64,000 bases of DNA from Lytechinus pictus (taxonomy: Eukaryota): the NCBI RefSeq assembly GCF_037042905.1, contig NC_087261.1, positions 29,636,001-29,700,000 on the forward strand, given 5' to 3'. Each line of letters begins with the position of its first letter. Position 1 is the stretch's first letter. The position numbers were made by a program, and so were the translations under genes. Below, one piece after another: positions 17,511 through 64,000 of the stretch. The notes beneath the pieces are model-generated. The model ran no database searches, was not told the origin of the DNA, and saw only the letters and a program-made list of their open reading frames with translations.

Positions 17511-18719
17511 ATGGGAAAAATTATTTGCTCTATTCTGCTCCTCTTTTTAAAGAGCTACGTTGGAAAAACTTTTTCTGACAGTGACGTTGGGCAGGAATGG
17601 ATAGATTGGATGCATAACAGTTCTATGAATACTTATACTGCGATTTGGACAGAGCAAACCATCGAAGGATCGGTTCAAGATTCAACGAATGACTCTCAGG
17701 ATTATTCTCTTATTGAATCCACGGAAGAGAATGGGGATAAGAATGTCGCATCGCCTACTTCGATGTCCTGGCTTTGGCAACCGATAACCTGGTCCTGGTG
17801 GGTCATTTTACAGATGACAACTGCACTTTTTGGTATCGTTGGCAACTCTCTTGTCATCATAATCATTTTCCAAAGACGAAAGAAGAGTAGATCCACGGAC
17901 ACACTGGTTGGTGCCCTGGCAGTTGCCGATCTTATCACGTCGATCTTTATGGTGCCACTGCCACCAACAAATCGAGTACCTTCAACTGCACTCGGCAAGT
18001 TTTACTGCAAGGTAGTGTACACATCAATGTTCATGTGGGTTTCGGTTACTGCATCTATTTTTACACTCACCTTCATACCCATTGAACGCTATATTGCCGT
18101 GGTGTACCCATTCCGTTTCAAAGAACTTCTAGCTCCAAGACGAATCTCAATTGCCATAATCTGCCTCTGGTTCACCGCTTTCATGTTAAATTCGTTCCTG
18201 TTTTTCATCTCGACTGTTGACCCATCTGCGGCGCAGTGCAGAGTGATTTATCCCAGAAGGTTCCAGATTGCCATGGGTGTGTTCCTCAACCTGATTGGGT
18301 TCTTCTTTCCAGCAATCCTGACAATAACCTTTCAAGTCCTTACAGCACATGCATTGCATCGCCAGGCACGACTTCAACTAGGTGAAGCGAAACAGCTTGA
18401 CAGATCCAATCCTTCAACCCGACATCTCATCGCCAAGAATCGCGTCCTGCATACACTATTCATCGTAGTTTTGATCTTTCTGATCTGTTGGGGGCCTGCT
18501 CATATAGTCTACCTTGCTTTTAACCTAGGATTCATTCCAGATTCATACCCTTATAGCCCGTTTAACCACGCTCTTGCAACCCTAGGGTTCTGCAACTCAT
18601 GCGCCAACCCTATCATCTATACTGTTCGCTACCCTGAATTCCGTACTGCTGTGCGAGAGCTTTTCACCAGAGCTCAGCTCGCAGAGGCTCCACTATTTGG
18701 AGATAGGGAAACCAAGTAA
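17511..18719 (+). CDS. Intact intronless class A GPCR (galanin/allatostatin-receptor-like, lineage-expanded type), 402 aa
   Basis: Seven hydrophobic segments; GN (TM1), LAVAD (TM2), YC before TM3, ERY, CWGP (TM6), NSCANPIIY (TM7), FR in helix 8. Confidence 0.95.
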   Translation: MGKIICSILLLFLKSYVGKTFSDSDVGQEWIDWMHNSSMNTYTAIWTEQTIEGSVQDSTNDSQDYSLIESTEENGDKNVASPTSMSWLWQPITWSWWVILQMTTALFGIVGNSLVIIIIFQRRKKSRSTDTLVGALAVADLITSIFMVPLPPTNRVPSTALGKFYCKVVYTSMFMWVSVTASIFTLTFIPIERYIAVVYPFRFKELLAPRRISIAIICLWFTAFMLNSFLFFISTVDPSAAQCRVIYPRRFQIAMGVFLNLIGFFFPAILTITFQVLTAHALHRQARLQLGEAKQLDRSNPSTRHLIAKNRVLHTLFIVVLIFLICWGPAHIVYLAFNLGFIPDSYPYSPFNHALATLGFCNSCANPIIYTVRYPEFRTAVRELFTRAQLAEAPLFGDRETK

Positions 18720-27206: not shown

Positions 27207-28258
27207 ATGTTACCTGGAGATCAACATATATCAAGTCTTGGGGAAGAAGAATTCTCAAATGATTCCGCAATGGTGACCGATAGATGGCTCTGGGAACCTA
27301 TACAATGGAACTGGTGGACAATCGTACAAGTGGCTACTGCAGTCGTTGGGATTATTGGCAACCTACTTGTAATCGTTCTGCTTTACCAGCGTCGCAAGCA
27401 AAGCAGGGCCACAGACACGCTCATAGGAGCATTGGCGATCGCAGATTTTGTCACATCGATCTTCATAATACCACTTCCAACAGCTTCGCGAGTACCATTG
27501 ACGATGCTTGGCGACGTTTACTGTAGGCTAATCACTAGCAGGTTCCTCTTGTGGTCTTCGACATCAGGATCAATCATGGCACTTACGAGTATTGCTGTCG
27601 AAAGATACATCGCAGTTGTACACCCACTGCGTTGCAAGGAGCTTCTCTCTAGGAGGAGAATCCGTACAGCCATTGTCCTGAGCTGGGTTCTTGGCATGAC
27701 ACTACACACGCCTCTTCTATACACCAACTTCCGTAATCCTCAACAGGAATGTGAATGGGGGTTTCCGTCCAGAGAAATACAAATTCTGATAGGCGGTGGC
27801 CTCTTCTCAACTCAGTTTTTCATCCCCATGATTGTGAGTCTCACTGTGCATGGGCTAACGGCACGTACCTTGCACCGTAAAGCAAATCTTTACCTCGGTG
27901 AGAACAAAAATCCTGATGCAGAAATCCATCCCTCCGACATGTCCTCGCCAAGAAGCGCGTTCTCCAAACGCTATTCTTAGTGATATTGTTCTTCATCCTA
28001 TGTTGGGGGCCTATCCAAGTTGGCTTTATTCTGTTTAATGTCGGAATCATACCAATGACCTTCGAGGGTAGTACTATACAGCGTATTTTCATCATATTGG
28101 CGCTATGGAACTCCTGTGCAAACCCATTCATCTACGCAATTCGCTTTCCAGAATTCCGCAAAGCTATAAGGGAGCTCTTCAATCCGAATCGGAACGACGC
28201 CCCTTTGTTCGATGACAGATGCCTAAAGACTGCACCGTTGCGTACAAAAGTTGTATAG
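27207..28258 (+). pseudogene. Intronless class A GPCR with a single frameshift at ~27921 (young pseudogene or sequence error)
   Basis: ORF 27207-27980 gives TM1-TM5. The shifted frame from 27923 reads NPSLRHVLAKKRVLQTLFLVILFFILCWGP...NSCANPFIY to the stop at 28258. No other lesion seen. Confidence 0.9.
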
Positions 28259-32139: not shown

Positions 32140-34344
32140 TGAGTGTGAAAGTAATGGTCGGATATCCTCGGCAAAGCAAATATACTGTCGACCACATTAC
32201 ATATAATATTAAGCACGGTGTCTTGATAGTTTTCATCTTTCAAAATACTAGTGTTCATTTTCCTATAACCAGCCGGTCTAATATCTGAGTTTATTACTCT
32301 AGGCTGTACATTTTTGTTTACAAGCCACTAATCTAGTCTTAATGTGATTCATAGAGATAGGTTTCTCTATGTAAATTATTTGCATAATGGGTTCATTTTT
32401 CTCCAGATATTACAAAGGGAATATCGTTTGAACGGTTTACAAAAATTTCGTGTTTTTTAAAATTAGATTTACTGCAGGTACCTTGATCATCACGAGCATT
32501 TAATACACAATTCCAGTCTCCAAATAAGATGAGATTAGAGTCTGAATAATTCACACCATTCCTACTAAGAAAAGGTTGTAAATTAAAAAACATCTCTCCT
32601 TATTGTTTTTATGTATGTCCATATATATTAAAAAGAGAATAATGCATAATATCAATAACAATTTTCAGAAGCAACTTTCTCCCATAATTATTCTGTTTTT
32701 ACAGATATAACATCAACACCAAACTTTTGATTAAAAAAGAACTGCAATTGCTGATGAATGATTCGATCCATGTGAAAAGTAACATGGTCCATGCCATATA
32801 TTTCTGATTAATTTCTCTATATCAGTTGTCCAATATGTAAAAGGATTTTATCAGTTTTTTGTCGTTGGAACCATCGAAATATATGTCTTCTCTTTTCTTT
32901 ATTTCTAAGTCCGTGGACATTAAGACCAATCAGATGACAGACTGACATCGGAAAAACGGATATATATGTATAAAATCGTATTCAAATATGCTCATTTCTT
33001 ATTTGATTGTCTTTTGATTCCTTTCTGATTCTTTTTTTTTTTTTTTACTATAGACGCTTCCGGATCTTAAACGAGGTCGAACAAACTCTGGTGACTCAGC
33101 TGAGACATCAGAGAAACGAGAAAATCAGCATGACTATTAGCGTGATGTTGACTTTGCACTGGAGTATCGCTGTAAGAAACTCCAGAAGCTTGGTCTTGTA
33201 GAAGAGGCGAGCTGTTGCTGAAAAGATCTTGTTGCGGGTTGCATGTAGCGGAGACGAAACGTGTTATCTTCGATTGTGATGTTGTGTCGCTTGACGCTCA
33301 ATCGCAATTACGGGTGGGCCTTGATGGTTCGCTCTCGTCATCCCCGTCGTTGCTAGAATCGTCGTTCGAAGATTGCACCTCGAAGGTGGGAACCACATTT
33401 TCCGTGACCATGCTAACTGCTTCCCGTTCTTTCTGCAAGAATGTCGTGATCATGCTTTGTTGTGCTACATTGGAAGGTTTATCTCGCTTGTTAGATGGTG
33501 ATGAGGCATCCTGTATTCCGGGTTGAACAGTGTCGTCACGTGAAGCAGGGGAAATGCCTGGGTCTGTAGTAGTGCAGTCTCTCTGATAGTGGCCAGTTTT
33601 GCGACAAAAGCGGCAGATTACTTCATTCTTGCAATTGGAACGGTGATTGCCCCTTTCCAGATTTTTCAAACAAACCATGGTCGTATTGTTGTCGGTGATC
33701 TGATTTGGATTGAACACTTTCGCTTTGAAGGCGCCAAAATTGACAAAGCTTGGCAGGGATTGGGGGGGGGGGGGTTTTCGATGTAGAACACCCTGTCCCC
33801 GGCTAGACATTCTGCCAGATTACTATCGACTCGAAGTCTTTGCAGTATGATCTTTCCGACTATTTTCGATTTCCTAGCTTGGAATTCATTCAAGATAACA
33901 TCATCATGAACATGTAATGGCAACTCTTTGATCAGTACTCTGGTTAGGTTGCCCTGGCTAGCAGGTAGGTCCCGAGGTAAGTATGGGTTTAGCTCAAGAG
34001 AGTGACACATGAGTTTCGTAAGTCTAGACCTTTTGTTATGAGGTCAATTCGGAATGCCACGCAATTTCGTGAAGGAAAGTGTTCTAGTTGTTACGGCATT
34101 GTCGTTGGACAAAGGTATATCACTGTGCTTGATGAAAACACGCTTACCTTCCGTGTTCATAGCGTGACGTTCATGCTCCTGTGTACCTGCTTTCGTGGCG
34201 CTATCGTAGGATGAACCTCGGGAAAACCCACTAGCCGCCATCTTACCACCCAATTGGCTGTAGAAAAGTTCAAAGATTTAGGCAATCTAAAGTCCAAATT
34301 CTCCAAAACGACGAGATCACAGGTCGACAAAGTGTTTCTGAAAA
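32140..34344 (-). mobile_element. L1/Tx1-clade LINE 5' portion: gag-like ORF1 with zinc knuckles and start of the APE endonuclease
   Basis: ORF1 from 34241 (MAASGFSRGSSY), RVLIKELPLHV, CRFCRKTGHYQRDC. ORF2 from 32948 (MSVCHLIGLNVHGLRNKEKR), LILFGDWNCVLN, RLD, ISDH. Frameshifted; no RT follows. Confidence 0.85.
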
Positions 34345-39326: not shown

Positions 39327-40376
39327 ATATTACCTGGTGATCAACATCTGTCTGGTCTTGGGAAGGAGGTTTAACAAATGATTTCACCATGGTAACCGAC
39401 AGGTGGCTCTGGAAACCCATACAATGGAACTGGTGGACAAACGTACAAGTGGCTACGGCTGTCGTAGGGATTCTTGGCAACCTTCTCGTAATCGTTCTGC
39501 TTTTCCAGCGTCGTAAGAAAAGCAGGACCACAGACAAGCTCATAGGAGCATTGGCTACTGCAGATCTCTTCACATCGATCTTCATGATACCACTTCCAAC
39601 TGCTGCACGTGTACCAATGACGATACTAGGCGAAATCTACTGCAGGCTGATTTCTAGCAAGTTCATATTGTGGTCTTCGGCAGCAGCATCTATAATGGCA
39701 CTTACGAGTATTGCTATCGAAAGATACATCGCGGTTGTACACCCACTGCGCTGCAAGGAGCTCCTCTCCAAGAGGAGAATCCGAACAACCATTGTCTTGA
39801 GCTGGGTTCTTGGCGTGACACTACATTCGCCGTTTCTCTACACCAACTTCCTAAATACTCAGCATGAATGCGATTGGGAATTTCCGTCTAAAACAAATTC
39901 AAATTCTAATAGGCGCTGTCCTTTTTGTATTTCAGTTTCTCATCCCCATGATTATGAGTCTCACTGTGCATGGGCTAACAGCACGTTCCTTGCACCGCCA
40001 AGCAAATCTTTACCTCGGTGCGAACCAAACTTCTGATGCAAATCCATGCATCAGACATGTCCTCGCCAAGAAGCGCGTTCTACAAACATTATTCTAAGTG
40101 ATATTGCTCTTCATCATATGCTGGGGGCCTATCCAAAATGGTTTTATTCTGCTCGACATCGGAATCATACCAGTGACTTTCGTGGGAAGTACTACACAGC
40201 ATGTTTTCATCATATTAGCGTTGTGGAACTCATGTGCGAACCCGTTCATCTACGCAATTCGCTTTCCAGAATTCCGCAGAGCTATAAGGGAACTCTTCAA
40301 TCCAAATCGGAACGACGCATCTTTGTTCGATGACAGATGCCTAAAGTCCGCACCGTTGAGAACAAAAGTGGTATAG
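39327..40376 (+). pseudogene. GPCR pseudogene, paralogue of 27207-28258
   Basis: Start ATG>ATA at 39327; +1 A at ~39890; TTA>TAA at 40095-40097. Otherwise TM1-TM7 are recognisable. Confidence 0.92.
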
Positions 40377-49497: not shown

Positions 49498-49597
49498 ATG
49501 GTAAGACTCCGGAGATTCGTCGGTGTTTTGACAATTTTTCTCCAAGCTTGGTTTGTTTTGGTCATGCTGGTAAGGGCTGTGGAAGGAAGAGGCTCTG
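49498..49597 (+). CDS. Coding exon 1 (signal peptide) of WSC-Sushi-TM receptor gene
   Basis: MVRLRRFVGVLTIFLQAWFVLVMLVRAVEGRGS: basic n-region, hydrophobic h-region, VEG cleavage-like site; phase-1 donor CTG|GTAAGT. Confidence 0.75.
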
Positions 49598-49945
49598 GTA
49601 AGTACTGAGTAAAGCATTTATTGTTATTCAACTGTTTAATTTTCATCTATTTCTTCAATAATATCTTTATTGGTTGATTCTTAAGAAGACTTAAACTAGC
49701 CGGAAAATGTTAAAAAAGTTAATACGTGTGGTTCTTTTTTATTCACACGCCGATGATATTCTCAGGTTTTTTTCTCAACAATATCGGATTATTGTGCTGC
49801 GGCAAATTTAAAACGAATTTGGACAGTTTAGAATCATGATTTTATTAATATTCATATAATCATTAATGAGTGTAAAGATTGTTTTACCATAGAACAAAAT
49901 TAAATGTTGAACAAGCTTGAAATAGACTAAAACATGATGAACATA

Positions 49946-52900
49946 TAGTCCGGCAGCCCAGGAGGTTTATTCAACCGAAAGCCGGACAAGCAAATGACCC
50001 CATAGCTGGATGGCATGGACCCTGAAGTTTACAAAAATGCATTGCTGCCGGGTTCTATCCGTGGTCTTCTATCCGAAATGACGTAATATATGACGTCACT
50101 ACAAAATTGCCCTATTTCACAATTTTTCAGACATTCTACACATAGCATGAAGTCAAGGGATAATATCTCAGCCAAACCATGCTTGTTTTGTATGAAACTT
50201 TCAAAATATATTGTTCAAATAGTGCACAAAAGATATACAAAATTTCACGAACAGATTTTATTGTTTACATATGCAAATTACGTAATGAAATTTGCATATC
50301 ATTAGTTGGGGAGATTTCTTGCTTCAATAATTGTCGAAAATCGATTCAGAAATTTATTTTCTTTTTTAGTGTACTTTATTTGATATATTTCCTCACAAGC
50401 ATAATATCATTCTCTTTATCTATATCTCTACTTCAAGAAAATATATGCCAGTAATTGGAAATGACATTATAGACTGTGATTTCAGCCCCCTTTTCAATAT
50501 GGTGCGCACATAGAAATAGTGCGTTTTTTGCCTATTTTCACCATATAGCTGAGGTGTGCGAACGATATGCCTACTTCATTGATGTTTCCTGCATTTTGCA
50601 TGATATTAAATCTGCCAAACAACATATTTTCATCTTCATTGTTTCTCTGCTGATAAATAAATGATTTCAGCAAGGATTGATTGCTCACTGGGCTACGTTT
50701 TCAGCCTAGTTTTCAACAACGAACCTATACCATGTATGACTGCATCGTTGTAGTTGAGTCGGATAAGGGTGTTCCTGTGTACCATCAAAATATTTTCATT
50801 CAACGCTTTTGTATTTGCCTGAAGTGTCTAGTTAATGAATCTTGATGTTCCCTTTTCAAAATCGTGTCCAACGGGGTTCAAATAGATATCTTTGGCGGCC
50901 CTCTTGGACTTTTTTAATGAAAATCAATTATTTTCATATTTTATTGCACAGAGTCTGACAATTGGACAATCTTAAAGGTAAATTAGATTTAGATTAGATT
51001 TATTGATTTATTTCATTTCTTTTCTTTCCATTTTTCACATACAAGTCAAAATACATATTAAATACAAATACATAAATACAATTACAAAAATGAACAAAAG
51101 TAACGACCTTACATTTGCAAAGATTGGGTAATTATACGAACAAAATACGATACTTATATCCTCATTTTATAAAACTTAACATTCTTAAAAGCATGAGTAT
51201 TCGTGTGTATGTTAAATGCTAGTTTTGGTAACGATATCAAAATGAGTTCGTACAGAATCCAATGAAATGACCACCAAAGTGTTTGTTTGTATAAATAAAA
51301 CATATGTGCCAAACGATTTTGGAAGAAATTGTGTAATTGCTGAGAAATCAGCAAATAAGCACAGGATTTCGGGTAGAGCGTCGGGCCCGACATTTGAAGC
51401 AATAATTATACACTGTCCCACGTGCGCTTATCTGTGTTATGATATCGTGCTTTTCGGAGCCCCCAATGTGGCAAAATTTTGTTTTGGGTATGTATTTTTT
51501 CATTTAAATCACTTAGAGACAAAAGAGTAGGCTTTTCTCTATCAGCTACATATAAAGAAGTTAGGGCATAGCAAAGCCTACCCCTCAGGTGGCTGCCAAA
51601 GTCACCCAATCCTTTTTTCGTATTTTGCCAATTTCTCGGAAAATTCGTCATTTTGGAGAACCATTGAGGCAAAAGGTGTTTCTGCCTTGCAGTAAAGCCC
51701 TTGTTTTTGTTTTGTAAGCACATAAAGATGACAAAGTAGGATCTTCTTGATCAGTTACATATAAAGATGTGGTAGCACACTGAAGGCTCCCCCTTCAGGG
51801 GGCTACCTCTTCCAACTTTTAAGTCTATTTTCCCTCTTTATTGAAAAAATTGCAGTGTTTGAGCCCCCATTCAGGCAAAAGGGCATTTCTGCTATATAGT
51901 AAAGCTAGTTATGATTTTGGAAACCACTTGGAAATAAACGAATAGGCTTTTTTCTATCAGCTACATGTAAAAAAGGGCTGGCACATCGACTTCTACCTTC
52001 TTCAGAGGCTCCAAGATTGGCAGATTTTCCCATATATTGGAAAAAATATGGAAAAGGGGTGGGTGACTTTATGAAAACCTAGAGGGATAGGCTTTGCTGT
52101 GCAACCACTTATTAGCAGCAGATAGAAGAAAGTCTACTCATTTAATTCCACGTAGTTTCAAAAGAATAAAATTGGCTTTACTATATAGCAGAAACACTTT
52201 TTGCCTCAATGGGGGCTCGAGAATAGCATATTTTCCCATAAAAAGGTAAAATATGGAAAAGGGGTGGGGGATTTGTATTCTTTTTTACCCATGTAATTTT
52301 GGATTATATCCATGGGGGGGGGGGTATACTCCTATATGCCAACACTTCTTGATATGTAGCAGATAGAGGAAACTCGACTCTTTCGTATCCACATAGTTTA
52401 AAAGCAATAAAAGTTGCTTTATTCCATATCAGAAACATTTTTTGCCTTAATTGGGGCTCCAAATTAGCATATTTTCCCATAAATGGGTAAAATACGTAAA
52501 AGGGATAGGTGATTTCGACGCCCTCTTAAGGGGGTATGCTTCAATATGCTAGCAGGTTTTTATATGTAGCAGATAGAGGAAACTCTACTCTTTTATCTCC
52601 ATGTAGTTTCAAAAGAATGAAAATGGCTTTATTCCATATCAGAAACGTATTTTGCCTTAATTGGGGCTCCAAATTAGCATATTTTCCCATAAATGGGTAA
52701 AATACGTAAAAGGGGTGGGTAACTTTGGCAGTCCCGAGAGGGAATAGGCTTTGCTGTACCAGCACTTCTTTATATGTAGCAGATAGAGAAAACTCTACTC
52801 TTTTATCCCTAAGTGGTTAAACAACAATAAAAGTGACTTTACTGCAAAGCAGAAACGTCTTTTCCCTTCAATTGGGCTCCAAAAATGTCGAATTTTCCAA

Positions 52901-54391
52901 GAAATTGGCAAAATACGAAAGAAGGATGGGGGACTCCGGCGGTCCCATAAGGGGGGGGGGGGGCTAGGCTTTGCTACGCCCTCATTTCTTTATAATGTAG
53001 CTGATAGAGAAAAATATAATGTTACAGAGGTCGCTTTTTGGTGTCATTTTATCGCAATATCGAGTAATATATGGTATTTGCCCTTTAACTAAGCAAATTA
53101 AGACATACATACTGTCATGAAGCGTTTCAGTATTATCGGTATATAATATCCTCTTTCGTGTCGAATGCTGATATTTTGCAGTAGTTGCTTATGTTAATGA
53201 TTGAACAGATAGATATCAATGCACATGAAAATTTTTGACCACATTCATTGCAATTTCGTGGTAAATTTTATTTCAAAATATGTTAGCTTTCCAGAAAACG
53301 AATTCAATCGATTTCTACTATCCGAATCATAGTGAAATGCGTATTCATTTAAGATTGTTCCATTGTCACACTCTGTGCAAAAAACATGAAAATAATTACT
53401 TTTCATTAAAAAAATCCAAGAGGGCCGCCAAAGATATCAATTTTGAACCCCGTTGGACACGATTTTGCGAAGTGAACATCAAGATTCATTAACTAGACAC
53501 TTCAGGCAAATACAAAAACGTTGAGTGAAAAATATATTATGATGGTGCAAAGGAACTCCCATTTCCGACTCTAAAACAATAATGCAGTCATACATGGTAT
53601 AGGTTAATTGTTGAAAACTAGGCTGAAAACGTAGCCTATAGACTGCCCAGTAGGCAATCAACTTTGCTGAAATCATTTATTCATCAGCAGAGACATAATG
53701 CAGATGAAAATATGTTGTTTGGAAGATTTAATATCATGCAAAATGCAGGAAACATCAATAAAGTAGGCATATCGTTCGCACACCTCAGCTATATGGTGAA
53801 AATAGGCCAAAAACGCACGATTTCTAGGTGCGCACCATATTTAAAAGGGGGCTGAAATCACAGTCTATAATGTCATTTCCAATTACTGACATATATTTTC
53901 TTGAAGTAGAGATATAGATGAAGAGAATGATATTATGCTTGAGAGGAAATATATCAAATAAAGTACACTAAAAAAGAAAATAAATTTCTGAATCGATTTT
54001 CGACAATTTTTGAAGCAAGAAATCTCCCAAACTAATGATATGCAAATTTCATTACGTAATTTGCATATGTAAACAATAAAATCTGTTCGTGAAATTTTGC
54101 ATATCTTTTGTGCACTATTTGAACAATATATTTTGAAAGTTTCATACAAAACAAGCATGGTTTGGCTGAGATATTATCCCTTGACTTCATGCTATGTGTA
54201 GAATGTCTGAAAAATTGTGAAATAGGGCCATTGTGTAATGACGTCATATATTACGTCATTTCGGAGAGAAGACCACGGATATAACCCGGCAGCAATGCAT
54301 GTTTGTATACGTCAGGGTCCATGCCATCTAGCTATGGGGTCATTTGCTTGTCCGGCTTTCGGTTGAATAAACATCCTGGGCTGCCGGACTA
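49946..54391. mobile_element. Academ-like non-autonomous DNA transposon with ~1 kb TIRs, in intron 1
   Basis: ata|tagtccggcagcccagga ... tcctgggctgccggacta|ata; 49946-~50976 is inverted at ~53347-54391 (mirror ORFs in the track). Confidence 0.85.
51500..53012. repeat. Inverted array of ~180-220 bp tandem units (foldback-like) inside the Academ-like element
   Basis: tctctatcagctacatataaaga units (3) then tatgtagcagatagagga units (5); orientation flips at ~52030. Confidence 0.75.
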
Positions 54392-54669
54392 ATACTTGAT
54401 ACAAAAGGGTCATGGTTTACAACGTATGCAAAGAAATAAGGGTTCCACTGGTTACAAAAGGAACACATACAGAGTATGAACAGTTTCAGAATACGACTAG
54501 TTTCTTGCACGTTTCATGATAACATAAACAATCAAAATTGGGTATGATTACAATCGACATACACGTCACAATATTAAATGACTCAAAGAAACACATTAAA
54601 ATTACTATAATATTCAGGACGATGCCATATGCATAAATAATAAAATATATTGGTAATTAGCACCGGACA

Positions 54670-54900
54670 AGGTGCTAAGATATAGCGCCCGCCCATGAAC
54701 GGGAGGTCGCGGGTTCGACCTCAGGCCGAGTCCTACAAAAGGTTTATAGATAAATGCGACCTTGCACCTTCTTAACAGAAGGTAGAAGGCCAGTGACAAC
54801 ATTATGCAGCATCCACTGGCCAGGAGAACAGTTCTTAAGAGCTGTAGTTGCTACATCAATAAATAATGATAACTATTATTATTCTCTTTTTATTACTATT
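54670..54900 (+). mobile_element. Degenerate tRNA-derived SINE
   Basis: gaggtcgcgggttcgacctc B-box-like head; ggagaacagttcttaagagctg tail; (att)n end. Confidence 0.5.
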
Positions 54901-55359
54901 ATTATTATCATTACTATTTATATTATTACTTTAATTAATATCACCACTTCTATTATCGTTGTTGTTGTTAGTGTGATTGCGTGGTGATTGATGATAGCAG
55001 TTATTGTGATTGTTTTTGCATGCTGGAAAATGGTGCAGATCAAAAAACTGATTCTGAAAACACAATCATGTTCCTCCCTTTTTCTTTCTGTCATTTTGGT
55101 AACACTTTAAAGTGTTTCCACACTCTTTATTCTTACTTTTCTCTTTCTGTCTTTTTCCTCTTTTGCTTATTTCTTTCTCTTTTCCCTTTGTTTCTTTCCT
55201 AATTTAGCTCCGTGGTTCTTTCTGTCTTTCTTTTTTTATTTTGTCCTTCTTTCTTTGTTATAGCCCTTTATTTAACATTGTCAAATTATTCACTCTCTTC
55301 ATTTGGGATACATCTTTTCAATATTTCATCAGTTTAATTAATCCCTAATATTATTGCAG

Positions 55360-55623
55360 GATACATCGGTTGTTATCCGGTGGGATATCATGTCCAATCT
55401 GTTTTCAACCATCAACCATACAACACGACGACAGTAGACGAATGCTTGCTGTTTTGCAGAGACGATTTTGAAAAACATGCCTCCATTTTGGGAAATTCGT
55501 GTTTTTGCAGCAACAGCATTCCCGATGACAGCGGGACAATCGAATAGGCTGAAAACGACTGGTGCGATAAGAATTGTTCGGGAAACTCTGGTCAGAAATG
55601 TGGTGGGAGGGCGCACTACTCAG
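55360..55623 (+). CDS. Exon 2: WSC domain, with in-frame TAG at 55545-55547
   Basis: ttgcag acceptor, CAG|GTAATT donor, phase 1-1. Translates YIGCY...TTVDECLLFC...SCFCSN...IE*AENDWCDKNCSGNSGQKCGG, the 8-Cys WSC pattern. Confidence 0.85.
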
Positions 55624-55799
55624 GTAATTTTTTTTCTACAATTATTATAAATCAACATCGGCAAACGTCGATAATTCACTTTGTCATCCCCTTCACATAA
55701 ATCTTGTTTCTCTCGCAATTTCATTCTTGCTTAATCTTTCACGTTTAAGGCCCCCCATTTTCTGCTTTGTTTTGCTCTTCCTTTCTCAGTTTTTACCTT

Positions 55800-55970
55800 T
55801 CTTTTTCCTTCTATTTTTCTTCTCCTCCTTTTCTTTCTTCTTCTTCATCATCATCTTCGTCTTCTTCTGTTTCTTCTTCTTCTTCTTCTACTTCATATTA
55901 TTCTTTTTGTTCTGATCCTTCTCACTCACTTCTTCTTCTTGTTCTTTCGGGTCTTGTTCTTCTTCTTATC
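55800..55970. repeat. Imperfect (TCT)n microsatellite
   Basis: Directly visible. Confidence 0.85.
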
Positions 55971-57539
55971 CTCTATATTACACACAGGTATGAGTTTTAG
56001 GGCTTTATGAATGTGGCGTGTGATCCGTCGAACAATAAACAAGACCCAAGCATCAAACCGTATATTCGTTTACAGACAGTGCGATCGGTCCAATCTGCTA
56101 TTTAATAGAGAGTAAACAATAAACACCAGTGGCTGTATAAACTGACTGGGCATAAACATGTCATATAGAAATAATATTTGCTGTCTCTGACTTCAAAACA
56201 AAACAAATGAATGTTGACTTGCATAACAACTTACAAAATACTGTATCTATTCAACAACTAATAATTACCTTGACATGATTCAAGGTCATATGAAGTATTA
56301 GTATACTGTATAGTATGTCATTCACTGATTGTTTGCCACAAATTCCACTTTTTTTGTTAAACAACTTTCATGAAAAAATACGACTTTAAATGTATTTCTT
56401 TTTTACATTTTTGTTATGTTAACATAGTAAATGACAATGCATTCATCCCGTGCCCGAAGGCGCCAAATTCAAGTTGCTTGCCTTTACACGATTAACTACG
56501 CTGCATAAGACTGTACATGTACGCAACATTTCCATGTGAACTAATTAATTTGGCCTCCGTAACTTTAATTTGATTACTTACAAAACATATTTCTCCATGC
56601 CACTCGGCTTAGATGATAATGTAACAAATAAACTTTGATATAACAAATGATACTCACATCATTGGGCTCGTATCACGAAATCTCAAGAAATTAAACAGCA
56701 ACTATGGGCAAACGGCACAATTTAGATGATGAGACATAATAGCAATACGCATCAATCGGTAAATTCACATTGATATCATCGATTTACAAGAAGAAACAAG
56801 AAATTCATAACAAATTAAGCAGTTATAAAAAAATCATAATAATTCTTTGCACGACAATGAATATATAAGAAAGTATGTTGCTAAGATAACATAGGTTTTC
56901 TGTTTGTTATGCTATTAGAAAAACATTAAAACAATTTATGACTGCACCAATCATTGATCGTGGACCAATATTAGGCATATCATATTCATCTTACGTTTCT
57001 TTCCGAATTCCTCTTTATCTTTTTCTACTTAGATTAGTCTTCATATCCTTCGAGTTTATGTTCGTATGCTTATTCGTCTTGTTTTACATTGTTTTCATCT
57101 ACATCAAACCCATTCACATTCCTTTTAAATAGGAAACACAGTTGAAATAAAGATACATTAATTCTTTATTCTTTATCGAGGCACTTCACCAAACATGCCC
57201 AATGCCATTTGAGAGGAACTTGTAAAAAATTCATGTTTCAATTTCATATACTAACGTGTTCAAGAGATACTTTCCAAACGATTCCAAACTATCTATTTGC
57301 ATTGAGTGGAAATTAATACGAAACATCAACACGCATGGCGATACAGCCGTTCACATTGATACACTTTTTCCAGATTACAGTGACATCCAATTAAATACAA
57401 ACAACCCTATTAATTGACTAATTTTAATTAATAGGTAATTACTCATCGAGGATAATATCTTTGGTTTGTTTTGTTACTAATAATATTTTCATTATATATT
57501 CTGTTTGACTTTTAACGATGTATTAACGCCTATCAATAT

Positions 57540-57646
57540 GGCGGCTTAGCTACAACCGGGGTAATAATATGATACCAAGTATCAAAGCGCAGTTGAGTAT
57601 ATGCACATAGTATTCTGCGCTATATAAATGGACATATTATTATTAT
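57540..57646 (+). mobile_element. SINE/L2-type 3' tail fragment
   Basis: ccggggtaataat (shared with the SINE at 44880), then aagcgcag...tgcgctatataaat and (att)n. Confidence 0.6.
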
Positions 57647-57868
57647 GTATGGGATAGTAGCTACAGTGAAAATCGATCTTGCGCTGCTCAGTGTCTGCCG
57701 GACCAAAGAGAAGAGGGGAAATTATTTTTTAGAGCATTTGTATTCCAGATACCGATTTCGAACAATGACAGTATGGATTTTCGTTTTCGTTGGTCATATG
57801 TTTAATAAGCAATATACATTTATCGGGGTGATTGAAATTTTGTAATTTTTTCATCATCAAATCCGCAG

Positions 57869-58072
57869 TGTTTAACACAACAGTTGGCATCTGTCCGCCG
57901 TTGATGCCGCCGTCAAATGGTGGAGTGAGCCGAATACTCTTTCGAGAAGGAGAACGGGTCAATTTTAGCTGTCGACCTGGCTATTCCCTGATTGGAAATG
58001 ATACCATAGAGTGTTTAAGTTCCCAATGGGAGACTGGAAAACCTATCTGGAGTGGAGATGCACCAAAATGTG
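57869..58072 (+). CDS. Exon 3: Sushi/CCP domain
   Basis: ccgcag acceptor, G|GTAGGA donor, phase 1-1. CPPLMPPSNG...GERVNFSCRPGYSLIGNDTIEC...WSGDAPKC. Confidence 0.9.
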
Positions 58073-60289
58073 GTAGGAACAACAATATTCCGCACGTTGC
58101 TATCAGATATGTAAGGACATGTTTACCATCGCCAATTGGAAGTCTTATTTTTTTTATCTAATCCTCAATGATTGCTAAGTTTCAGTTTCGTTCATGACAT
58201 TTCCAAGTAGATTGAAAAATAATATTCGATGTAGCAATCTGACAGCCATGCATATAATTTATTATCAAAAATATACGATCGATTACATTTATTATACGAA
58301 AATAATTACAGCTGACACACTTAGCGTAATTTGATCTTGAAGGGAAAATATCAAAGTTCACACGGATTATTTATTTCATCGTCTACTATCATTCTGTAGT
58401 AGTAATGAACAGATACGTAAAAGATTTGATAAAGAATAATTGAAACATTAATTTCCGCATTCATCGTACATGAATGAATATACATATTATATCACATAGT
58501 GAATACAATTATCTTTAAATGTCTTCTTTTATATTCAAAATCCTTTTCACCAGCGCACTTTCATTACTTGCTTGATGTTCTTTTTCTGGTTCTGTATCGG
58601 TGCTGAAATCAAATCACGAATAGCACCTTCGGCAGTTATTTCAAAGATACTATTTTTCTTATGTCTTAAGTCAGGTCATGATTAATATTTCAATTTTTTT
58701 CCAGAAATAACCAACCAAACCGCATCTGAGGATAAAGGTAAATATTACTGCACACTCTCCTTGCAAAAATAGTGAATAGTGAGAGTGCGATGAACGTGCA
58801 TAGTCCATAACATTGTCGCGTATGAGATATGCATGTATCCACTTTTAAGGGCGGGGGAGGGTAAAATGTAAAAAAAAAAAACCTATAATCAAAGCCAGGG
58901 TGGAGCAAGCCAAACGAACTGATGATAACCCCCCCCCCCCTTAATTCTAGATTAATTAACCAAAATTAACAGACTTAAAAGTAAAATTGATTAAAATCAA
59001 AAGTAATTGATGAAAGTTCAGGGTCAACTGCCTACTTTTCATTGAGTGCAGGTCATAGCTCAATGATTTATCACAAGAGGATTTGTTTTATAGCTGAGAA
59101 GAAATGATTCCAAGAGATCATTAATTGTATTAAATGCCAACGTTCTGCCTAAGCACCCATCTATCACCCAAATTGACTCAGCAATGATTAATCTCCTTTA
59201 AAGTTAAGTACATGTAGGTTCTAATAGAATTTCAACAAATAAATTAATAAATATACAAATTCAAGATGTGACAAGCAGCCAGATAAATCAAAAACAATTT
59301 GGTCGCCATAAAAATATCAGTAAAATAATTAAATATTAATTTGCTTTTCAGGAAATGAAACCTAGATTAAAAAAAAAACATGAAAAATTGGGTGATCTAA
59401 AAGAGTAAGCCTTTTTTTCTGGATCTTCTTCTACTCCTTAATACTTTCAAAGGTTGTTTAGCGACGAAAAAAAATCTAACTCTATCTTTTCTGACTACGA
59501 GGAAGTTATACTGTACAGTGTGCACATGTAATGCTTATGTGAGCTTCTAACTTGAAACCTTACTTACATTTTAAGCAATACATTACAGCTACATTTAATC
59601 AAGTTCTTGTGTGGATTATTGCTGATCAATTTTGATAGATTATGTATTATTTTAAAGCTTAGGGTGTGCCTTATCAAGATCAATTAAAGTATTTAAAAAA
59701 TCCAGCGACCTATTACTGCTTTCGGGGTGGCGGGTCACATACGAAATAAGAAAAGAGAAACAAAATTAGAGATATGACCGCATTCCTGATCGATTGCCAT
59801 TATTATGCTGTGCATTATTTGTAAAATGTAGTATTTTCCCCCGTTTCCTTTGTAAGCTGGTAAGGGAGTGTATTTTTTTTTTTTCAATTTAATTATCAAA
59901 TAAAGCTTTGCTTTTTCCTATTTGCGCTTTAAATCATTTAAAGCAATACAAACCAATTATAATGGATAACCTAATGAATGTTAATACCGTTTTACAAATT
60001 ATGTGTACATAATCATAATATGTCATATTGCAAGATTTACATGTAACAACAATGTCTATTTGGATTAAATCGACTTCCGCCTATTTACATATTTTTGGGG
60101 TAATCATCGATTACATTTATTTTCTCGGTTTCTTTCATTTCTGATTAGAGATGTATAGGGCAAATATACGCGATTGTGTCAGATTAACATGTTTAAACAA
60201 TATCAACATTTCAATTCAGTTATATTGGTCGACTGATTGATTTATGAAATTGATTCCACTCGTATCGTTTTCTCTTCTTTGTTTTTCAG

Positions 60290-60383
60290 GAGCATCAGGA
60301 GCATGGTCCCTGGGATGGGTTCGGTTGCTAATTGTTGTAGCTGTTTTAATAGCTGGGACTTTCTTAATCATTCTGATTTTCTT
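60290..60383 (+). CDS. Exon 4: transmembrane helix
   Basis: Polypyrimidine tract plus ttcag acceptor, TT|GTAAGT donor, phase 1-2. GASGAWSLGWVRLLIVVAVLIAGTFLIILIF. Confidence 0.85.
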
Positions 60384-60619
60384 GTAAGTGATGTGTACTC
60401 CCTAATCAATTTGCGAACTCAATTTTGAACAGCGCCAACTTGAAACCTGAGCTAGTCATTTAGTTTCTGGACCCTTGCACAGGATGAAACATTTCGATTA
60501 TGAAGTCTTATCACACATTTCACATGAGGCCAATTATATTTTAATACCACTTTTCTATATCTATTATTATTATTATTATTTATTTTTTCATTTTAATAAA
60601 ACGTAAAAAATACCATCAG

Positions 60620-60774
60620 GGGCTTGTTTCATAAAGGACTTACAACTGTTGTAACTTTGCCATAATGGCAACTACCATGGTGACAGGGCTCAGCAGCCTA
60701 TCAAAATCAGATTTCCATGGTAGTTGCCATAATAGCAAAGTTACAACAGTTATAACTCCTAATAATTCGTGCCC
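60620..60774. mobile_element. Harbinger-like MITE
   Basis: Inverted arms caactgttgtaactttgccataatggcaactaccatgg / ccatggtagttgccataatagcaaagttacaacagtt; CWG flanks. Confidence 0.75.
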
Positions 60775-61102
60775 CTGGTTGTGATTTTTGTCATGGTCAG
60801 TAGTTTTCAATCACTAGTTAACTGGGCGGATAATCATCTTCGAATTGAGGAAAAAGAAGGAAATTTGAAATAATGGGAGAAAATGAATTTCATACAGCCG
60901 AGGGACATTGACAATGTGTTATGAACTTTAAGAAATGCCATGATGACACACAATTGTGCTAGACTGAAGCGTAGACCATATCCATAACATAATTGAAATA
61001 AAAATACAGATGGATTGATATGTTAACCTTTTCTCTTCAAAATCGTTATTCCTTTTCCTTTCACCTTTCAATAAAGTCACATTATTATTATTTTCTTTTT
61101 AG

Positions 61103-61949
61103 TACGTTGAGGGCGCGTCGTTGTTGTCCAAAAAAATCACGCACTCGTACTTTAACCACGAGAGAAGACTTCTCCATGCCAGATTGTGCCATGGCCAGTA
61201 CGCTCGATTCCAAGCACAGTCCTAGGATCCTTACCCGAAGTTACAGAAGCTTCTCATTCGAGAATAGTTCAGAGGTGAACTGGGAAGATGATCAGGAGAA
61301 GGATGACGCTAATGATGCAGTCACGACTACGAGCATGGGAACCGCGGTAAAATCACGATTAAAGGCCCCTGAGAACGACGATCAGGGAAACAAAACACAA
61401 CCAAGCGCTGACAATAGTTGCCCAGGATCTTCTAAGAAAAAAGGGGGCACCAACAGGATAAACTCTTTCGCGGATATCTTAAGGCCATCATTTCCTGGAA
61501 GAGCAAAACAAGGAACTGAAATAGCTTCTAGCTGCACCTCCACCAAACCACCCAATGTCCCCAAAAAGCCCTCTAAACTCGAAGAAGCTTCAAGGCCGAA
61601 TGTCGAGTATACTTCTATCAAACCTCGCTGCAAATCTGCCTATATTCCGAATACTCAGAAATGGAAAAGCAAATCCGTACAGCAAGAGACCAAGAAGACA
61701 GGAGATGTCAGCCAGGACGATGACAGACGACGTAACCATGTCCATAATCAACACGATCGAAAGTCAGATATGTATTGCAATACAGCTGAAATAGCTAGTA
61801 GATGGCGTGTCAAGCAAGGCATTCAAGTAGATCAAGATGGAGAAGGAACAGGATCTGAAAACGTAAGGTCAAGACCAGCCGTAATGCCACGACCAAAACT
61901 CCCCAAATTTAGATATCGCGAGTGCTTTTCAATGCAAGAGCTAGATTGA
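61103..61949 (+). CDS. Exon 5: cytoplasmic tail (~281 aa, likely disordered)
   Basis: ttttctttttag acceptor in phase 2 joins ORF 61020-61949: TLRARRCCPKK (stop-transfer, Cys pair), PPNVPKKP, VEYTSI, MYCN, PAVMPRPKLP. Confidence 0.85.
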
Positions 61950-62715
61950 GGATTGTGATATTGCAATATTATCTCTTCTCTTGTGAAAGAATATATAAAT
62001 ACTATTGCTTTTAGAAACATACAGGTTTAAAACACATTTCTACGTTGGGTAATTAAACTGACCCAATGCGCCCAGCTTGGAGTGGTTCCATCACAGCAGA
62101 ACGTCTCTTGAATCTACTTCCGGGGACACATAGCGGATACTGGAAAACGTTTCAGATGTACTTGACTAGAAATGATATTATGCGAACATGATAAGGCAGC
62201 ATGATGATTCATTTACAGTATCAGATACTCGAAGAGAACATTGAGACCTCTGTCTTCTGATTACTTATTGATAAAAAAATGGCATAGAAAGATAAATATG
62301 TCGCGGTGCGATGGGCCACCCGGTCCATATGCTGGCACCACATTCATGGCAACAGCCTAGACAAACTATCTGAACCAGAATACAAACTTATACTTACAGG
62401 AAAATGATGTGTATAATATACACATTAATTTCATTTAAGTAATCATTTGCTATACTACAGGAAAACGATTTCGATCTACAATATGTGTGTATATTCTCTT
62501 TGCACGTTACTCACTTAAAAGTAAAAGCACACAGAGAATGGTGTACATAATATGACAGTTATCAGTTACCGTCAAACATAATATCATATGTATATATTCT
62601 GCGTTACACTGTTACATTTTTCAAGAAATATTAAAACATTTGGCATTGTAATGTCTGCGAAGAATGCGTCCTGTTAAAACAAATAAAAAAAAATAAAAAA
62701 AAGCTAATCATGTTC

Positions 62716-63035
62716 TGTGTGTGTGTGTGTGTTGGTAGAGTGGTGGGTATGTTGACAGAGTGGTGGGTGGGTGTGTGGATAGAGTGGTGGGTGGGGTGTG
62801 TGGATAGAGTGGTGGGTGGGTGTATTGGTAGATTGGTGGGTGGGTGTGTTGACAGAGTGGTGGGTGGGTGTGTGGATAGAGTGGTGGGTGGGTGTATTGG
62901 TAGATTGGTGGTTGGGTGTATTGGTAGATTGGTGGGTGGGTGTGTTGACAGAGTGGTGGGCGGGGTGTTGACAGAGTGGTGGGTGGGTGTGGGTAGAGTG
63001 GTGGTTGGGTGTATTGGTATATTTTGTGGATGGGT
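62716..63035 (+). repeat. GT-rich 24-bp minisatellite
   Basis: Units such as ggtgggtgggtgtgtggatagagt and ggtgggtgggtgtattggtagatt. Confidence 0.9.
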
Positions 63036-63084
63036 CGGGATAATGACAGACCTCAGACACAGTTGTTTGGGAATTTTGTTCAGC

Positions 63085-64000
63085 ATATTAAAATTTTAGG
63101 TGTTTATTTTTCCCTTAATGTTATATTAAAAGAAGACATGAATTACAAAGAAATACTTAGTAACATAAAAAGACTGTTGGGATGGTGAAAACAAAGGGAT
63201 CTCACACTTATGGGGAAAATTCACTTGTTAAAAACATATGCATTGTCAAGGCTAAACTTTGTTTCGTCACTAATAGTGGTTCCTCAGTGGTTGTATGCTG
63301 AGGTTGAAAAGATCACATTTGAATTTTTATGGTCCGGAAAAGATCGGATAAAGATAATTATAATGTACCAGGATTACTCACAAGGGGGTTTAAAAATGAT
63401 GAATTTTAAGTTGTTTGTAAAGTCTCAACGTTTAATGTGGCTTAAACGATTACTTTACGGAGAACGAGATGCAGGATGGAAGTTGTATTTTGATTTTTGT
63501 TTTCGATCAGTTGGGGGGAGATTTCTGTTTCTATGTGACTTTGACACTTCAAAATTAAATACAAAAATGCCCCCATTTTATTCAGAAATGATGAAGGCTT
63601 GGCAAGACTTAAGGAGATTTCGTTATTCTGAAGAGGAGGTTAACCCTATTATATTCAATAATCAACATATTTGTATAAAAGGTAAAACAATTTTTGACAA
63701 TGATCTTTTTAATAAAGGAATATTTAGCGTTGATCAAATCTTTGATAATGGCCACTTGAAGCCTGTGACTTTTTTTCAAAATCTCGGTATTACCGCAAAT
63801 CAACTTCTCCAAATAATAGATATTGTGCACGTTATACCAGCAAGCTGGAAAAATTTTAATAGTTTAATAAAGTTTAAAAAATTGATTTGGTAGACTTTGG
63901 GATAAATATGAATATTGGAAAACAGGAAACAGCTTTTGAAGTAATTCAAAAACAATTTATAACTTGTTTATTACTAAGCTACAAGAGCTATGCAAGTTAA
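63085..64000 (+). mobile_element. L1/Tx1-clade LINE ORF2 C-terminal region (5'-truncated), running off the window
   Basis: KILGVYF, W*KQRDLTLMGKIHLLKTYALSRLNF, FLWSGKDRIK, GGL motifs; TGA at 63186. Confidence 0.85.

What the first reader, a model, noticed from the sequence alone, without database searches (positions are those of the whole stretch)
49498..61949. Hidden five-exon type I receptor: signal peptide - WSC - Sushi - TM - tail with ITIM-like and SH3/SH2 motifs
Seen: exons 49498-49597, 55360-55623, 57869-58072, 60290-60383 and 61103-61949 have canonical GT-AG sites and compatible phases (1,1,1,2). They sum to 1509 nt (502 codons plus stop), and the WSC end continues across the junction (HYS|VFNT). 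Known: WSC is a putative carbohydrate-binding module (yeast Wsc1, Kremen, polycystin-1) and CCP is a complement/adhesion module. Seen in the tail: VEYTSI fits the ITIM consensus [IVLS]xYxx[ILV], YCN fits a Grb2-SH2-type YxN, and PPNVPKKP and PAVMPRPKLP fit class II SH3 ligands. Inference: a candidate uncharacterised glycan-sensing immune or signalling receptor. I do not recognise this architecture as a named gene.
Basis: partly seen in the sequence, partly recalled or inferred. Interest (0 to 1): 0.8.

Follow-up and report, generated by a model that had tools for sequence, protein, structure and literature searches.

The report
Sea urchin WSC-Sushi membrane receptor gene
This is a real, transcribed gene of the painted sea urchin for a single-pass membrane protein with a sugar-binding-type (WSC) and a Sushi domain outside the cell.

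Summary
The gene is real, but the model needs two corrections. The window is Lytechinus pictus, contig C17.

- **Domains.** Pfam confirms WSC and Sushi.
- **Splicing.** Spliced transcript contigs from two studies show three GT..AG junctions (exon 3 to a micro-exon, micro-exon to exon 4, exon 4 to exon 5) and indirectly support exon 2 to exon 3.
- **Reading frame.** The frame is 513 codons, not 502, and is not open here. Codon 96 is TAG (55545-55547) inside the WSC exon. One low-depth transcript contig reads AAG there, and paralogues have Arg at that position.
- **Exon 1.** No read confirms it. It is the only suitable candidate in 15 kb, and it resembles the first exon of a paralogue.
- **Annotation.** NCBI annotates only the tail (LOC129280744, 257 aa).
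- **Tail motifs.** In two orthologues the island P[DN]VP[EK]KP…VEY[AT]S[IV]…PRCKSxYIP is invariant in 5 of 5 copies. The YCN and C-terminal SH3 motifs are not conserved.
- **Family.** The nearest relatives are tandem neighbours. One intact 391-aa paralogue has the same exon phases. The genome holds at least 114 WSC exons, 82 of them on C17.

The scan has already noted similar WSC receptor families elsewhere in this genome. A receptor role is inferred, and an immune role is untested.

The parts
49498..49597 (+). Exon 1 (proposed): start codon and signal peptide MVRLRRFVGVLTIFLQAWFVLVMLVRAVEGRGS, phase 1 donor
   Evidence: It is the only ATG-to-GT segment in the 15 kb upstream of exon 2 that has phase 1, a good donor and a hydrophobic core. 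Its end (VRAVEGRGSGY) aligns with the first exon of paralogue par2 (VRNVAGNGLGY). No read confirms the junction.
55360..55623 (+). Exon 2: WSC domain (264 nt, phase 1-1), eight Cys
   Evidence: Pfam PF01822 scores 30 bits (cut-off 27.8) on 55362-55544 plus 14.2 bits on 55548-55622. Read through the stop it scores 44.5 bits. Contigs from runs X1 and X2 cover it.
55545..55547 (+). In-frame TAG (codon 96) in a loop of the WSC domain. A transcript contig reads AAG (Lys).
   Evidence: The TAG is seen directly. The X1 contig reads A at 55545, at depth 3.4, and this is its only difference in 231 letters. Four of the aligned paralogues have Arg at this position.
57869..58072 (+). Exon 3: Sushi/CCP domain (204 nt, phase 1-1)
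   Evidence: Pfam PF00084 scores 40.5 bits against a cut-off of 20.7. Contigs X1-6 and X2-13 cover it without differences.
58705..58737 (+). It encodes EITNQTASEDK, a short stalk with an N-glycosylation sequon.
   Evidence: Joints 58071>58704 (cut +1) and 58735>60288 (cut +2), both GT..AG, appear in one contig each of X1 and X2. The flanking letters are ccag|…|gtaaat.
60290..60383 (+). Exon 4: membrane span (WVRLLIVVAVLIAGTFLIILIFF), ends in phase 2
   Evidence: The hydropathy peak is 3.27. The joint 60383>61103 is GT..AG in X1 and X2.
61103..61949 (+). Exon 5: 281-aa cytoplasmic tail and stop codon. The 3' UTR probably runs on to about 62545.
   Evidence: P0001 (LOC129280744) matches it apart from one residue. 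It occurs once in the genome. 78% of its residues are disorder-promoting and it has no Pfam hit. The 1415-letter X2 contig starts at 61131; the UTR length is inferred from that.
61542..61664 (+). Conserved tail island: PxxPxK (PNVPKK), VEYTSI (ITIM-like, Y401), PRCKSAYIP (Y412)
   Evidence: It is invariant in 5 of 5 module copies of L. pictus, P0003 and P0004. It is unique in the genome.

Best explanation
The locus is a transcribed six-exon gene of Lytechinus pictus. Public annotation covers only its last exon, as LOC129280744.

**Protein.** It encodes a 513-residue type I membrane glycoprotein with these parts in order:
- a signal peptide;
- one WSC domain;
- one Sushi/CCP domain;
- an 11-residue glycosylated stalk;
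- one membrane span;
- a 281-residue disordered cytoplasmic tail.

**Origin.** It arose by tandem duplication within a large echinoid expansion of WSC-ectodomain single-pass genes concentrated on contig C17. In these genes, phase 1-1 domain exons such as Sushi come and go.

**The stop.** The assembled allele has a premature TAG at codon 96. At least one transcribed allele reads AAG. The stop is therefore most likely a segregating null allele or a base error, not loss of the gene.

**How it most likely works (inferred).** The WSC and CCP ectodomain binds an extracellular glycan or glycoprotein. The signal passes through the conserved tail island: a PxxPxK site docks an SH3 protein or kinase, and the two invariant tyrosines (VEYxS[IV] and SxYIP) are phosphorylated and recruit SH2 proteins. 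By ITIM analogy the recruited protein would be an SHP-type phosphatase.

**Shown:** gene structure, transcription, domains, family context and motif conservation. **Inferred:** ligand, phosphorylation, partners, and the direction of signalling.
For: - **Exons, TAG and revised frame:**
- **Domains:** WSC and Sushi. The nearest solved WSC domain is Kremen1, weakly (E 0.036).
- **Transcripts:** spliced contigs in two studies, and A at 55545.
- **Organism and partial annotation:**
- **Uniqueness:** the tail is single-copy, and P0003 hits only this locus in reverse.
- **Motif conservation:**
- **Constraint on the tail:** dN/dS is about 0.4 against the orthologues, with dS saturated.
- **Paralogue par2:** an intact 391 aa with identical exon phases, 28% identity running from the end of the signal peptide through the membrane span.
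- **Tandem neighbours:** they are the best WSC and Sushi matches.
- **Family size:** at least 114 WSC exons, 82 of them on C17, and only two contain stops.
- **Ectodomain features:** six N-glycosylation sequons, eight WSC cysteines and four Sushi cysteines.
Against: - The reference allele cannot make the protein because of the TAG at codon 96.
- The intact allele rests on one contig at depth 3.4.
- The exon 1 to exon 2 junction was not observed.
- Expression is low. Contig depth is 2-5, and two RNA runs sampled at about 6% gave no exon reads.
- L. pictus has one tail module, while the orthologues have two. It has also lost their GY[AD]VM (YxxM) motif. This could mean decay.
- The two orthologues differ from each other at dN/dS of about 0.9, so most of the tail is barely constrained.
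- No full-length orthologue was found, so conservation of the ectodomain is unknown.
- No data address ligand, phosphorylation or tissue.
Confidence: 0.6

Rival explanations
1. The gene is a decaying duplicate, a unitary or polymorphic pseudogene in L. pictus. It is still transcribed but no longer makes a working receptor.
For: - TAG at codon 96 in the assembly.
- It is one of only two WSC exons with a stop among at least 114.
- It has lost one tail module and the YxxM motif relative to the orthologues.
- Transcript depth is low.
- NCBI could model only the tail.
Against: - Apart from one base the whole 513-codon frame, all splice sites, all 12 domain cysteines and the conserved tail island are intact.
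- A transcript contig reads AAG, a sense codon, at exactly that base.
- Paralogues carry a basic residue at that position.
- Tail dN/dS against the orthologues is about 0.4.
Confidence: 0.2
2. The protein is an adhesion or matrix-binding surface protein, or a regulator of complement-like proteins through its CCP domain. Its tail would serve trafficking or cytoskeletal anchoring rather than phosphotyrosine signalling.
For: - CCP modules are typical of complement regulators and adhesion proteins (established knowledge).
- The conserved tail island also contains basic and Cys residues (KPRCKS).
- The conserved C-terminus FS[MI]QEL[DE] could be a sorting or docking motif.
- No kinase or other enzymatic domain was found.
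Against: - Two tyrosines and a PxxPxK site are the invariant core of the only strongly conserved tail island, and that island is duplicated as a unit in the orthologues.
- Paralogue tails differ in sequence but again carry Tyr motifs: GEGYVPM and ANYENR in par2.
Confidence: 0.15
3. Carriers of the TAG allele skip the 264-nt, phase 1-1 WSC exon and make a shorter signal peptide-Sushi-membrane protein.
For: Exon 2 is a multiple of three and symmetric in phase, so skipping keeps the frame. A neighbouring paralogue lacks a whole domain exon, in its case Sushi, which shows such exons are dispensable over evolutionary time.
Against: No contig joins exon 1 to exon 3. The contigs entering exon 3 carry the end of exon 2 ('CAG'), not that of exon 1 ('CTG'). 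The only contig across the site carries the sense allele.
Confidence: 0.05

Closest known systems
Sea-urchin WSC-ectodomain single-pass gene expansion
   Same: It shares a signal peptide, a WSC exon in phase 1-1, a membrane span and a disordered tail with tyrosine motifs. It lies in tandem arrays on contig C17. Its neighbours par1, par2 and par3 are its best matches.
   Different: It has one Sushi exon and a micro-exon stalk. Its tail sequence is unique in the genome, with no detectable similarity to any other member. It carries a nonsense codon in the assembly.
Kremen1/2 (vertebrate Dickkopf co-receptors)
   Same: Both are type I membrane proteins with a WSC domain in the ectodomain. Kremen1 is the nearest solved WSC structure by sequence, though only weakly (E 0.036).
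   Different: Kremen has Kringle and CUB domains flanking WSC. Neither appears in any exon or in the open frames of intron 1. The tails are unrelated.
Yeast Wsc1/Slg1-type cell-wall stress sensors
   Same: The layout is the same: signal peptide, WSC, stalk, single membrane span, then a signalling tail.
   Different: The yeast proteins are fungal, have a long Ser/Thr-rich stalk and no CCP, and their tail binds Rom2. No homology is detectable outside WSC. This comparison rests on established knowledge and was not tested here.
ITIM-bearing inhibitory receptors of vertebrates (for example Siglecs, PECAM-1)
   Same: Both are single-pass receptors with a glycan-binding-type ectodomain. The motif V-x-Y-x-x-[IV] is conserved in all five orthologous module copies and sits next to a second invariant tyrosine.
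   Different: The ectodomain is not of the Ig type. The second tyrosine (YIP[NS]) fits neither the ITIM nor the ITSM pattern. The spacing of 11 residues is shorter than in typical tandem ITIMs. Phosphorylation and SHP binding are untested.
Selectins (C-type lectin, EGF, CCP repeats, membrane span)
   Same: The logic is similar: a lectin-type module followed by CCP module(s), a membrane span and a short signalling tail.
   Different: The lectin module here is WSC, not C-type. There is no EGF domain and only one CCP. The two are not homologous as whole proteins.

Membership tests
WSC domain (Pfam PF01822) | HMM score above the gathering threshold (27.8 bits) | tested here: met
   30 bits on the part before the stop alone. 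44.5 bits over profile positions 1-82 when read through the TAG.
WSC domain (Pfam PF01822) | Eight conserved cysteines | tested here: met
   The translation shows GC, EC, FC, CFC (two), WC, NC and KC, which makes eight. The same pattern is seen in the paralogues.
WSC domain (Pfam PF01822) | Carbohydrate binding | not testable with these tools
   It needs recombinant ectodomain tested on glycan arrays.
Sushi/CCP (Pfam PF00084) | HMM score above threshold (20.7 bits), with four Cys and the conserved Trp | tested here: met
   40.5 bits over profile positions 1-54. The pattern ICP…FSC…IEC…IW…PKC is present.
Type I membrane protein | N-terminal signal peptide plus a single membrane span, with the ectodomain between them | tested here: inconclusive
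   Hydropathy peaks lie at residues 6-28 and 210-232, and there are six N-x-S/T sequons between them. No dedicated signal-peptide predictor was available, and exon 1 is not confirmed by reads.
Kremen family | Kringle, WSC and CUB domains in the ectodomain | tested here: not met
   Only WSC and Sushi were found in the exons. Transcript contigs join exons 3, the micro-exon, 4 and 5 directly, and exon 2 to exon 3 indirectly. No Cys-rich open frame was seen in intron 1 on reading the translations by eye; no Pfam scan was run on them.
ITIM-type inhibitory receptor | [IVLS]xYxx[ILV] in the cytoplasmic tail, conserved in orthologues | tested here: met
   VEYTSI in L. pictus, and VEYASV in both copies of P0003 and of P0004.
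ITIM-type inhibitory receptor | Tyrosine phosphorylation and recruitment of SHP-type phosphatases | not testable with these tools
   It needs biochemistry.
ITAM | Yxx[LI]-x(6-8)-Yxx[LI] | tested here: not met
   In YTSI-KPRCKSA-YIPN the first half and the spacing fit, but the second tyrosine has N or S at position +3 in all copies.
   The five copies read MYCN, IYYS, INCS, IYCS and INCS.
Local WSC(-Sushi) tandem family of L. pictus contig C17 | Same exon order and phases (1,1,1,2), and closest WSC and Sushi similarity to neighbours | tested here: met
   par2 has exons of 97/261/216/76/526 nt with the same phases, and its 391-aa product is 28% identical. The best WSC and Sushi matches lie at C17:29.70-29.93 Mb.
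Local WSC(-Sushi) tandem family of L. pictus contig C17 | Homologous cytoplasmic tail | tested here: not met
   The tail and its conserved island hit only themselves in the genome, even at E up to 10. By contrast the tails of par2 and par3 are 74% identical to each other.

The most novel reading that the evidence does not exclude
This gene and its C17 neighbours belong to an undescribed, echinoid-specific superfamily of WSC lectin-like surface receptors. The ectodomains would diversify by shuffling of phase 1-1 exons. The tails would fall into inhibitory (ITIM-like, as here) and activating (YxxM or YxN, as in par2) types, with null alleles segregating. That would be a sea-urchin counterpart of vertebrate paired receptor clusters such as KIR, Ly49 or the Siglecs.
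Probability: 0.15. Interest if true: 0.75.

Novelty: new variant of a known kind. Interest (0 to 1): 0.45.

Why it matters
Sea urchins are known for very large innate-immune receptor repertoires (TLR, NLR, SRCR). A further expanded set of single-pass receptors built on the WSC module, clustered on one chromosome and carrying conserved tyrosine motifs, would add a receptor class that I found in no paper searched.

For this gene the practical results are:
- a corrected gene model, where public annotation has only the tail;
- a candidate natural null allele in a laboratory species that can be bred and edited;
- a short, sharply conserved tail island that gives a direct handle for testing signalling.

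On its own, though, it is one ordinary member of a lineage-specific expansion, and its ligand and tissue are unknown.

Tried and rejected
- **Tail homology searches.** Searches with the tail and with a tail profile found only the L. pictus models and two orthologue fragments from genomic Logan contigs. The extra hits P0005 and P0006 are translated tandem repeats, not relatives.
- **Paralogue tail search.** The search with the par2 tail found nothing.
- **ESM Atlas look-up of the tail.** Scores stayed at or below 0.77, which is noise.
- **P0002 ('uridylate-specific endoribonuclease-like').** It looked like a fusion partner. Its EndoU exons lie about 20 kb upstream of the window on the opposite strand, and its N-terminus is translated intron. 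I treat it as a chimeric gene model.
- **Signal-peptide similarity in other paralogues.** The apparent tblastn extension into the signal-peptide region is translation of polypyrimidine tracts, with a stop in one case. It is not evidence. Only the spliced exon 1 of par2 counts.
- **Genome-wide Sushi list.** It was truncated (150 of 883 candidates scored), so the count of adjacent WSC-to-Sushi exon pairs, 10 or more, is a lower bound.
- **Raw RNA runs X15 and X16.** They gave no exon coverage at about 6% sampling, which does not show the gene is silent.
- **Source species of the orthologue contigs.** It could not be traced from the accession numbers.
- **NCBI gene range for P0001.** It was not retrievable.
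Full report
**Observation**

Each acceptor ends in AG and each donor starts with GT. The phases are 1,1,1,2 and the lengths sum to 1509 nt.

The translation is not open, however. Codon 96 is TAG at 55545-55547, inside the proposed WSC exon. The same reader logged this stop in a separate note.

Pfam confirms both domains:
- WSC is split by the stop but stays in one frame. The part at 55362-55544 scores 30 bits on profile positions 1-59, and the part at 55548-55622 scores 14 bits on positions 65-82.
- Read through the stop, WSC scores 44.5 bits over positions 1-82.
- Sushi scores 40.5 bits on 57871-58071.

**Transcripts**

I laid two contig sets (X1 and X2, from different studies) and two raw RNA runs on 55300-61299. 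X1 and X2 cover the exons and little else in the stretch, apart from two abundant intronic repeats and a few faint bins, and they contain joints with the introns removed. They must therefore derive from spliced RNA.

The joints are 58072>58705, 58737>60290 and 60383>61103, all GT..AG. It keeps phase 1 and encodes EITNQTASEDK, which includes an N-glycosylation sequon.

The contigs entering exon 3 carry 'CAG' in front of it, and one has 13 further letters that do not fit the intron. This matches the end of exon 2 (…CTCAG) and not that of exon 1 (…CTCTG). Exon 2 is therefore included in these transcripts.

The corrected model has six exons, 1542 nt and 513 codons.

The exon 1 to exon 2 junction was not seen. 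The X1 contig over exon 2 has 12 more letters upstream that the tool did not show. The raw RNA runs, sampled at about 6%, had no reads on the exons. Expression there is low or absent, and their tissue is unknown to me.

**The stop codon**

The single X1 contig across the site reads A at 55545, which gives AAG (Lys). This is its only difference from the window in 231 letters, at depth 3.4. The X2 contig ends 14 letters before the site.

A random single difference would fall on a stop-removing change in roughly 1% of cases. I therefore take it as a real allele or as a correction of an assembly error, with the caution that it is one low-depth contig.

At the aligned position four paralogues have Arg (…IARAGDE…, …ITRAGDE…, …ISRLDNE…, …SRVTDD…). 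A basic residue is thus the expected state.

Among at least 114 WSC exons in the genome, only this one and one other contain a stop.

**Organism and annotation**

The tail is identical, apart from one residue (H444P), to NCBI 'uncharacterized protein LOC129280744 [Lytechinus pictus]'. That model has 257 aa and starts at an internal Met of exon 5. The window is contig C17:29636001-29700000 of an 812-Mb assembly. The full-length architecture is therefore absent from public annotation.

A second model, 'uridylate-specific endoribonuclease-like' (P0002), joins translated intron, most of the tail and an EndoU enzyme. Its EndoU exons actually lie on the opposite strand about 20 kb upstream of the window. 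I regard it as a chimeric prediction.

**Exon 1**

The same scan finds one or two such candidates (sharing a donor) 1-2 kb upstream of the WSC exon of two paralogues.

In the spliced alignment with paralogue par2, similarity runs from the end of the signal peptide across the junction: VRAVEGRGSGYIGCYPVG against VRNVAGNGLGYMGCYPVG. Exon 1 is therefore probable but unproven.

**Family context**

The best matches to the WSC exon in the genome are seven exons on the same strand at C17:29.707-29.874 Mb, plus one at 20.99 Mb. The best Sushi matches include exons 1.5-4 kb downstream of three of these.

I modelled one neighbour, par2 (C17:29.733-29.741 Mb). It has five exons of 97/261/216/76/526 nt with phases 1,1,1,2 and an open 391-codon frame. 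Its layout is signal peptide, WSC, Sushi, membrane span and tail, and it is 28% identical to this gene through the membrane span.

Another neighbour, par3, has a WSC exon and a tail 74% identical to that of par2, but no Sushi exon between them. The Sushi exon is therefore gained or lost among close relatives.

Genome-wide there are at least 114 WSC exons, 82 of them on C17 in several clusters. At least 10 WSC exons are followed within about 4 kb by a Sushi exon on the same strand. This count is a lower bound.

The scan's earlier notes describe similar WSC receptor families elsewhere in this genome. I used them as leads only. My own counts agree that such an expansion exists.

In the searched literature I found WSC mentioned in sea urchin SRCR-family, PKD1/REJ-family and WSC-domain sulfotransferase contexts (PMC10855680). 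I found no description of WSC-Sushi single-pass receptors.

**The tail**

The 281-aa tail has no Pfam match, and 78% of its residues are disorder-promoting. It occurs once in the genome, even when searched with its most conserved 41 residues at E up to 10.

Only two relatives were found in very large protein collections: P0003 (413 aa) and P0004 (351 aa). Both come from short contigs of unidentified species, with intron-like, non-coding sequence upstream of P0003. P0003 hits only this locus when searched back, so they are orthologues.

In both orthologues a module of about 115-140 residues is duplicated. Aligning the five module copies gives these results:
- **Invariant in all five:** P-[DN]-V-P-[EK]-K-P, V-E-Y-[AT]-S-[IV] and P-R-C-K-S-x-Y-I-P.
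- **Conserved in the orthologues (outside or at the end of the module):** the juxtamembrane stretch RTLTTREDFS.PDCAM.STL…RSYR.FS and the C-terminal FS[MI]QEL[DE].
- **Lost in L. pictus:** the orthologues have GY[AD]VM (a YxxM pattern) in all four copies, and L. pictus has a four-residue gap there. par2 has a similar GEGYVPM, plus ANYENR.

dN/dS of the tail is about 0.4 against the orthologues, with dS saturated. It is about 0.9 between the two orthologues. Constraint is therefore confined to short islands, as expected for linear motifs in a disordered tail.

**Interpretation**

What is shown:
- The gene is spliced and transcribed.
- It has a WSC, Sushi, stalk, membrane-span and tail layout.
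- It arose by tandem duplication.
- Its tail carries one sharply conserved island built around a PxxPxK site and two tyrosines.

What is inferred:
- The ectodomain binds a glycan or glycoprotein. WSC is a putative carbohydrate-binding module, and its nearest solved relative by sequence is the Kremen1 WSC, though only at E 0.036.
- The tyrosines are phosphorylated and recruit SH2 proteins.
- The VEYxS[IV] motif acts like an ITIM.

The gene is not a Kremen, because it has no Kringle or CUB domain. The motif pair does not fit an ITAM. An immune role has no direct support.

The main rival is that the L. pictus copy is decaying, given the stop, the single module and the lost YxxM. Against this stand the otherwise intact frame, intact splice sites, intact cysteines, the conserved island and the sense allele in RNA.

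**Verdict**

This is a genuine and under-annotated gene with a corrected structure. It is a new variant within a large, lineage-specific receptor-like expansion, not a one-off architecture. Interest is moderate. The family as a whole, and the possibility of paired inhibitory and activating tails with segregating null alleles, is more interesting than this single member.

Noticed in passing
window 17511-18719 (+), 27207-27980 (+), 39389-40036 (+): Three intronless rhodopsin-type GPCR open frames match Pfam 7tm_1. The first is full length (402 aa, profile positions 1-260). The other two stop after profile positions 185 and 148, so they are truncated copies or need frameshifts or introns. This looks like a tandem GPCR cluster upstream of the WSC gene.
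   Followed up: partly
window 57523-57646 and 60627-60740: Two short intronic stretches have summed contig depth in the thousands, many variant letters, and reads on both strands in all four runs. They are abundant dispersed repeats that are transcribed somewhere in the genome.
   Followed up: no
G000:C17:29613375-29618179 (-), about 20 kb upstream of the window: The EndoU/XendoU gene whose exons NCBI model P0002 fuses to this gene's tail lies here on the opposite strand. One matching exon has a TGA inside the match. P0002 looks like a chimeric model from another assembly version.
   Followed up: partly
G000:C17 as a whole: 82 of at least 114 WSC exons in the genome lie on this one contig. The clusters are near 6.4, 9.7-11.7, 14.3, 15.6, 21.0, 22.4-23.3, 25.1-25.3, 27.3-27.4, 29.3-30.0 and 31.4-31.7 Mb.
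   Followed up: partly
L011:1991-2290 and L011:6410-6709; L012:1421-1984 (C17:29.779-29.789 Mb): Two similar WSC exons lie 4.4 kb apart. They are followed by a membrane-span and tail exon 74% identical to that of par2, with no Sushi exon in between. Only a 26-residue weak Sushi-like remnant follows the first WSC exon. This shows domain-exon loss or gain among close paralogues.
   Followed up: partly
G000:C17:23025619-23025855 (-): This is the only other WSC exon in the genome list with an internal stop (TAA).
   Followed up: no
window 62635-63096 (also just past the window end at C17:29701200-29701547); window 63189-63890: A minisatellite translates as GRLVGGCVDRVVGGC repeats and flanks long open frames with no Pfam hit. 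These look like a degraded mobile element just downstream of the gene.
   Followed up: no
window 33301-33810 (-): A 170-aa open frame carries a CCHC zinc knuckle and is probably a retroelement gag remnant.
   Followed up: no
window 61103-61949: Runs labelled as a second organism (organism B) hold 7-10% of the sampled words of exon 5. A congener therefore probably has a close orthologue. I did not lay these runs.
   Followed up: no
window 61211 and residue 444 of the model: There is a synonymous C>A at 61211 in both transcript sets (TCC to TCA, Ser268). NCBI's P0001 has Pro where the window has His at residue 444, so several haplotypes of this gene are on record.
   Followed up: partly
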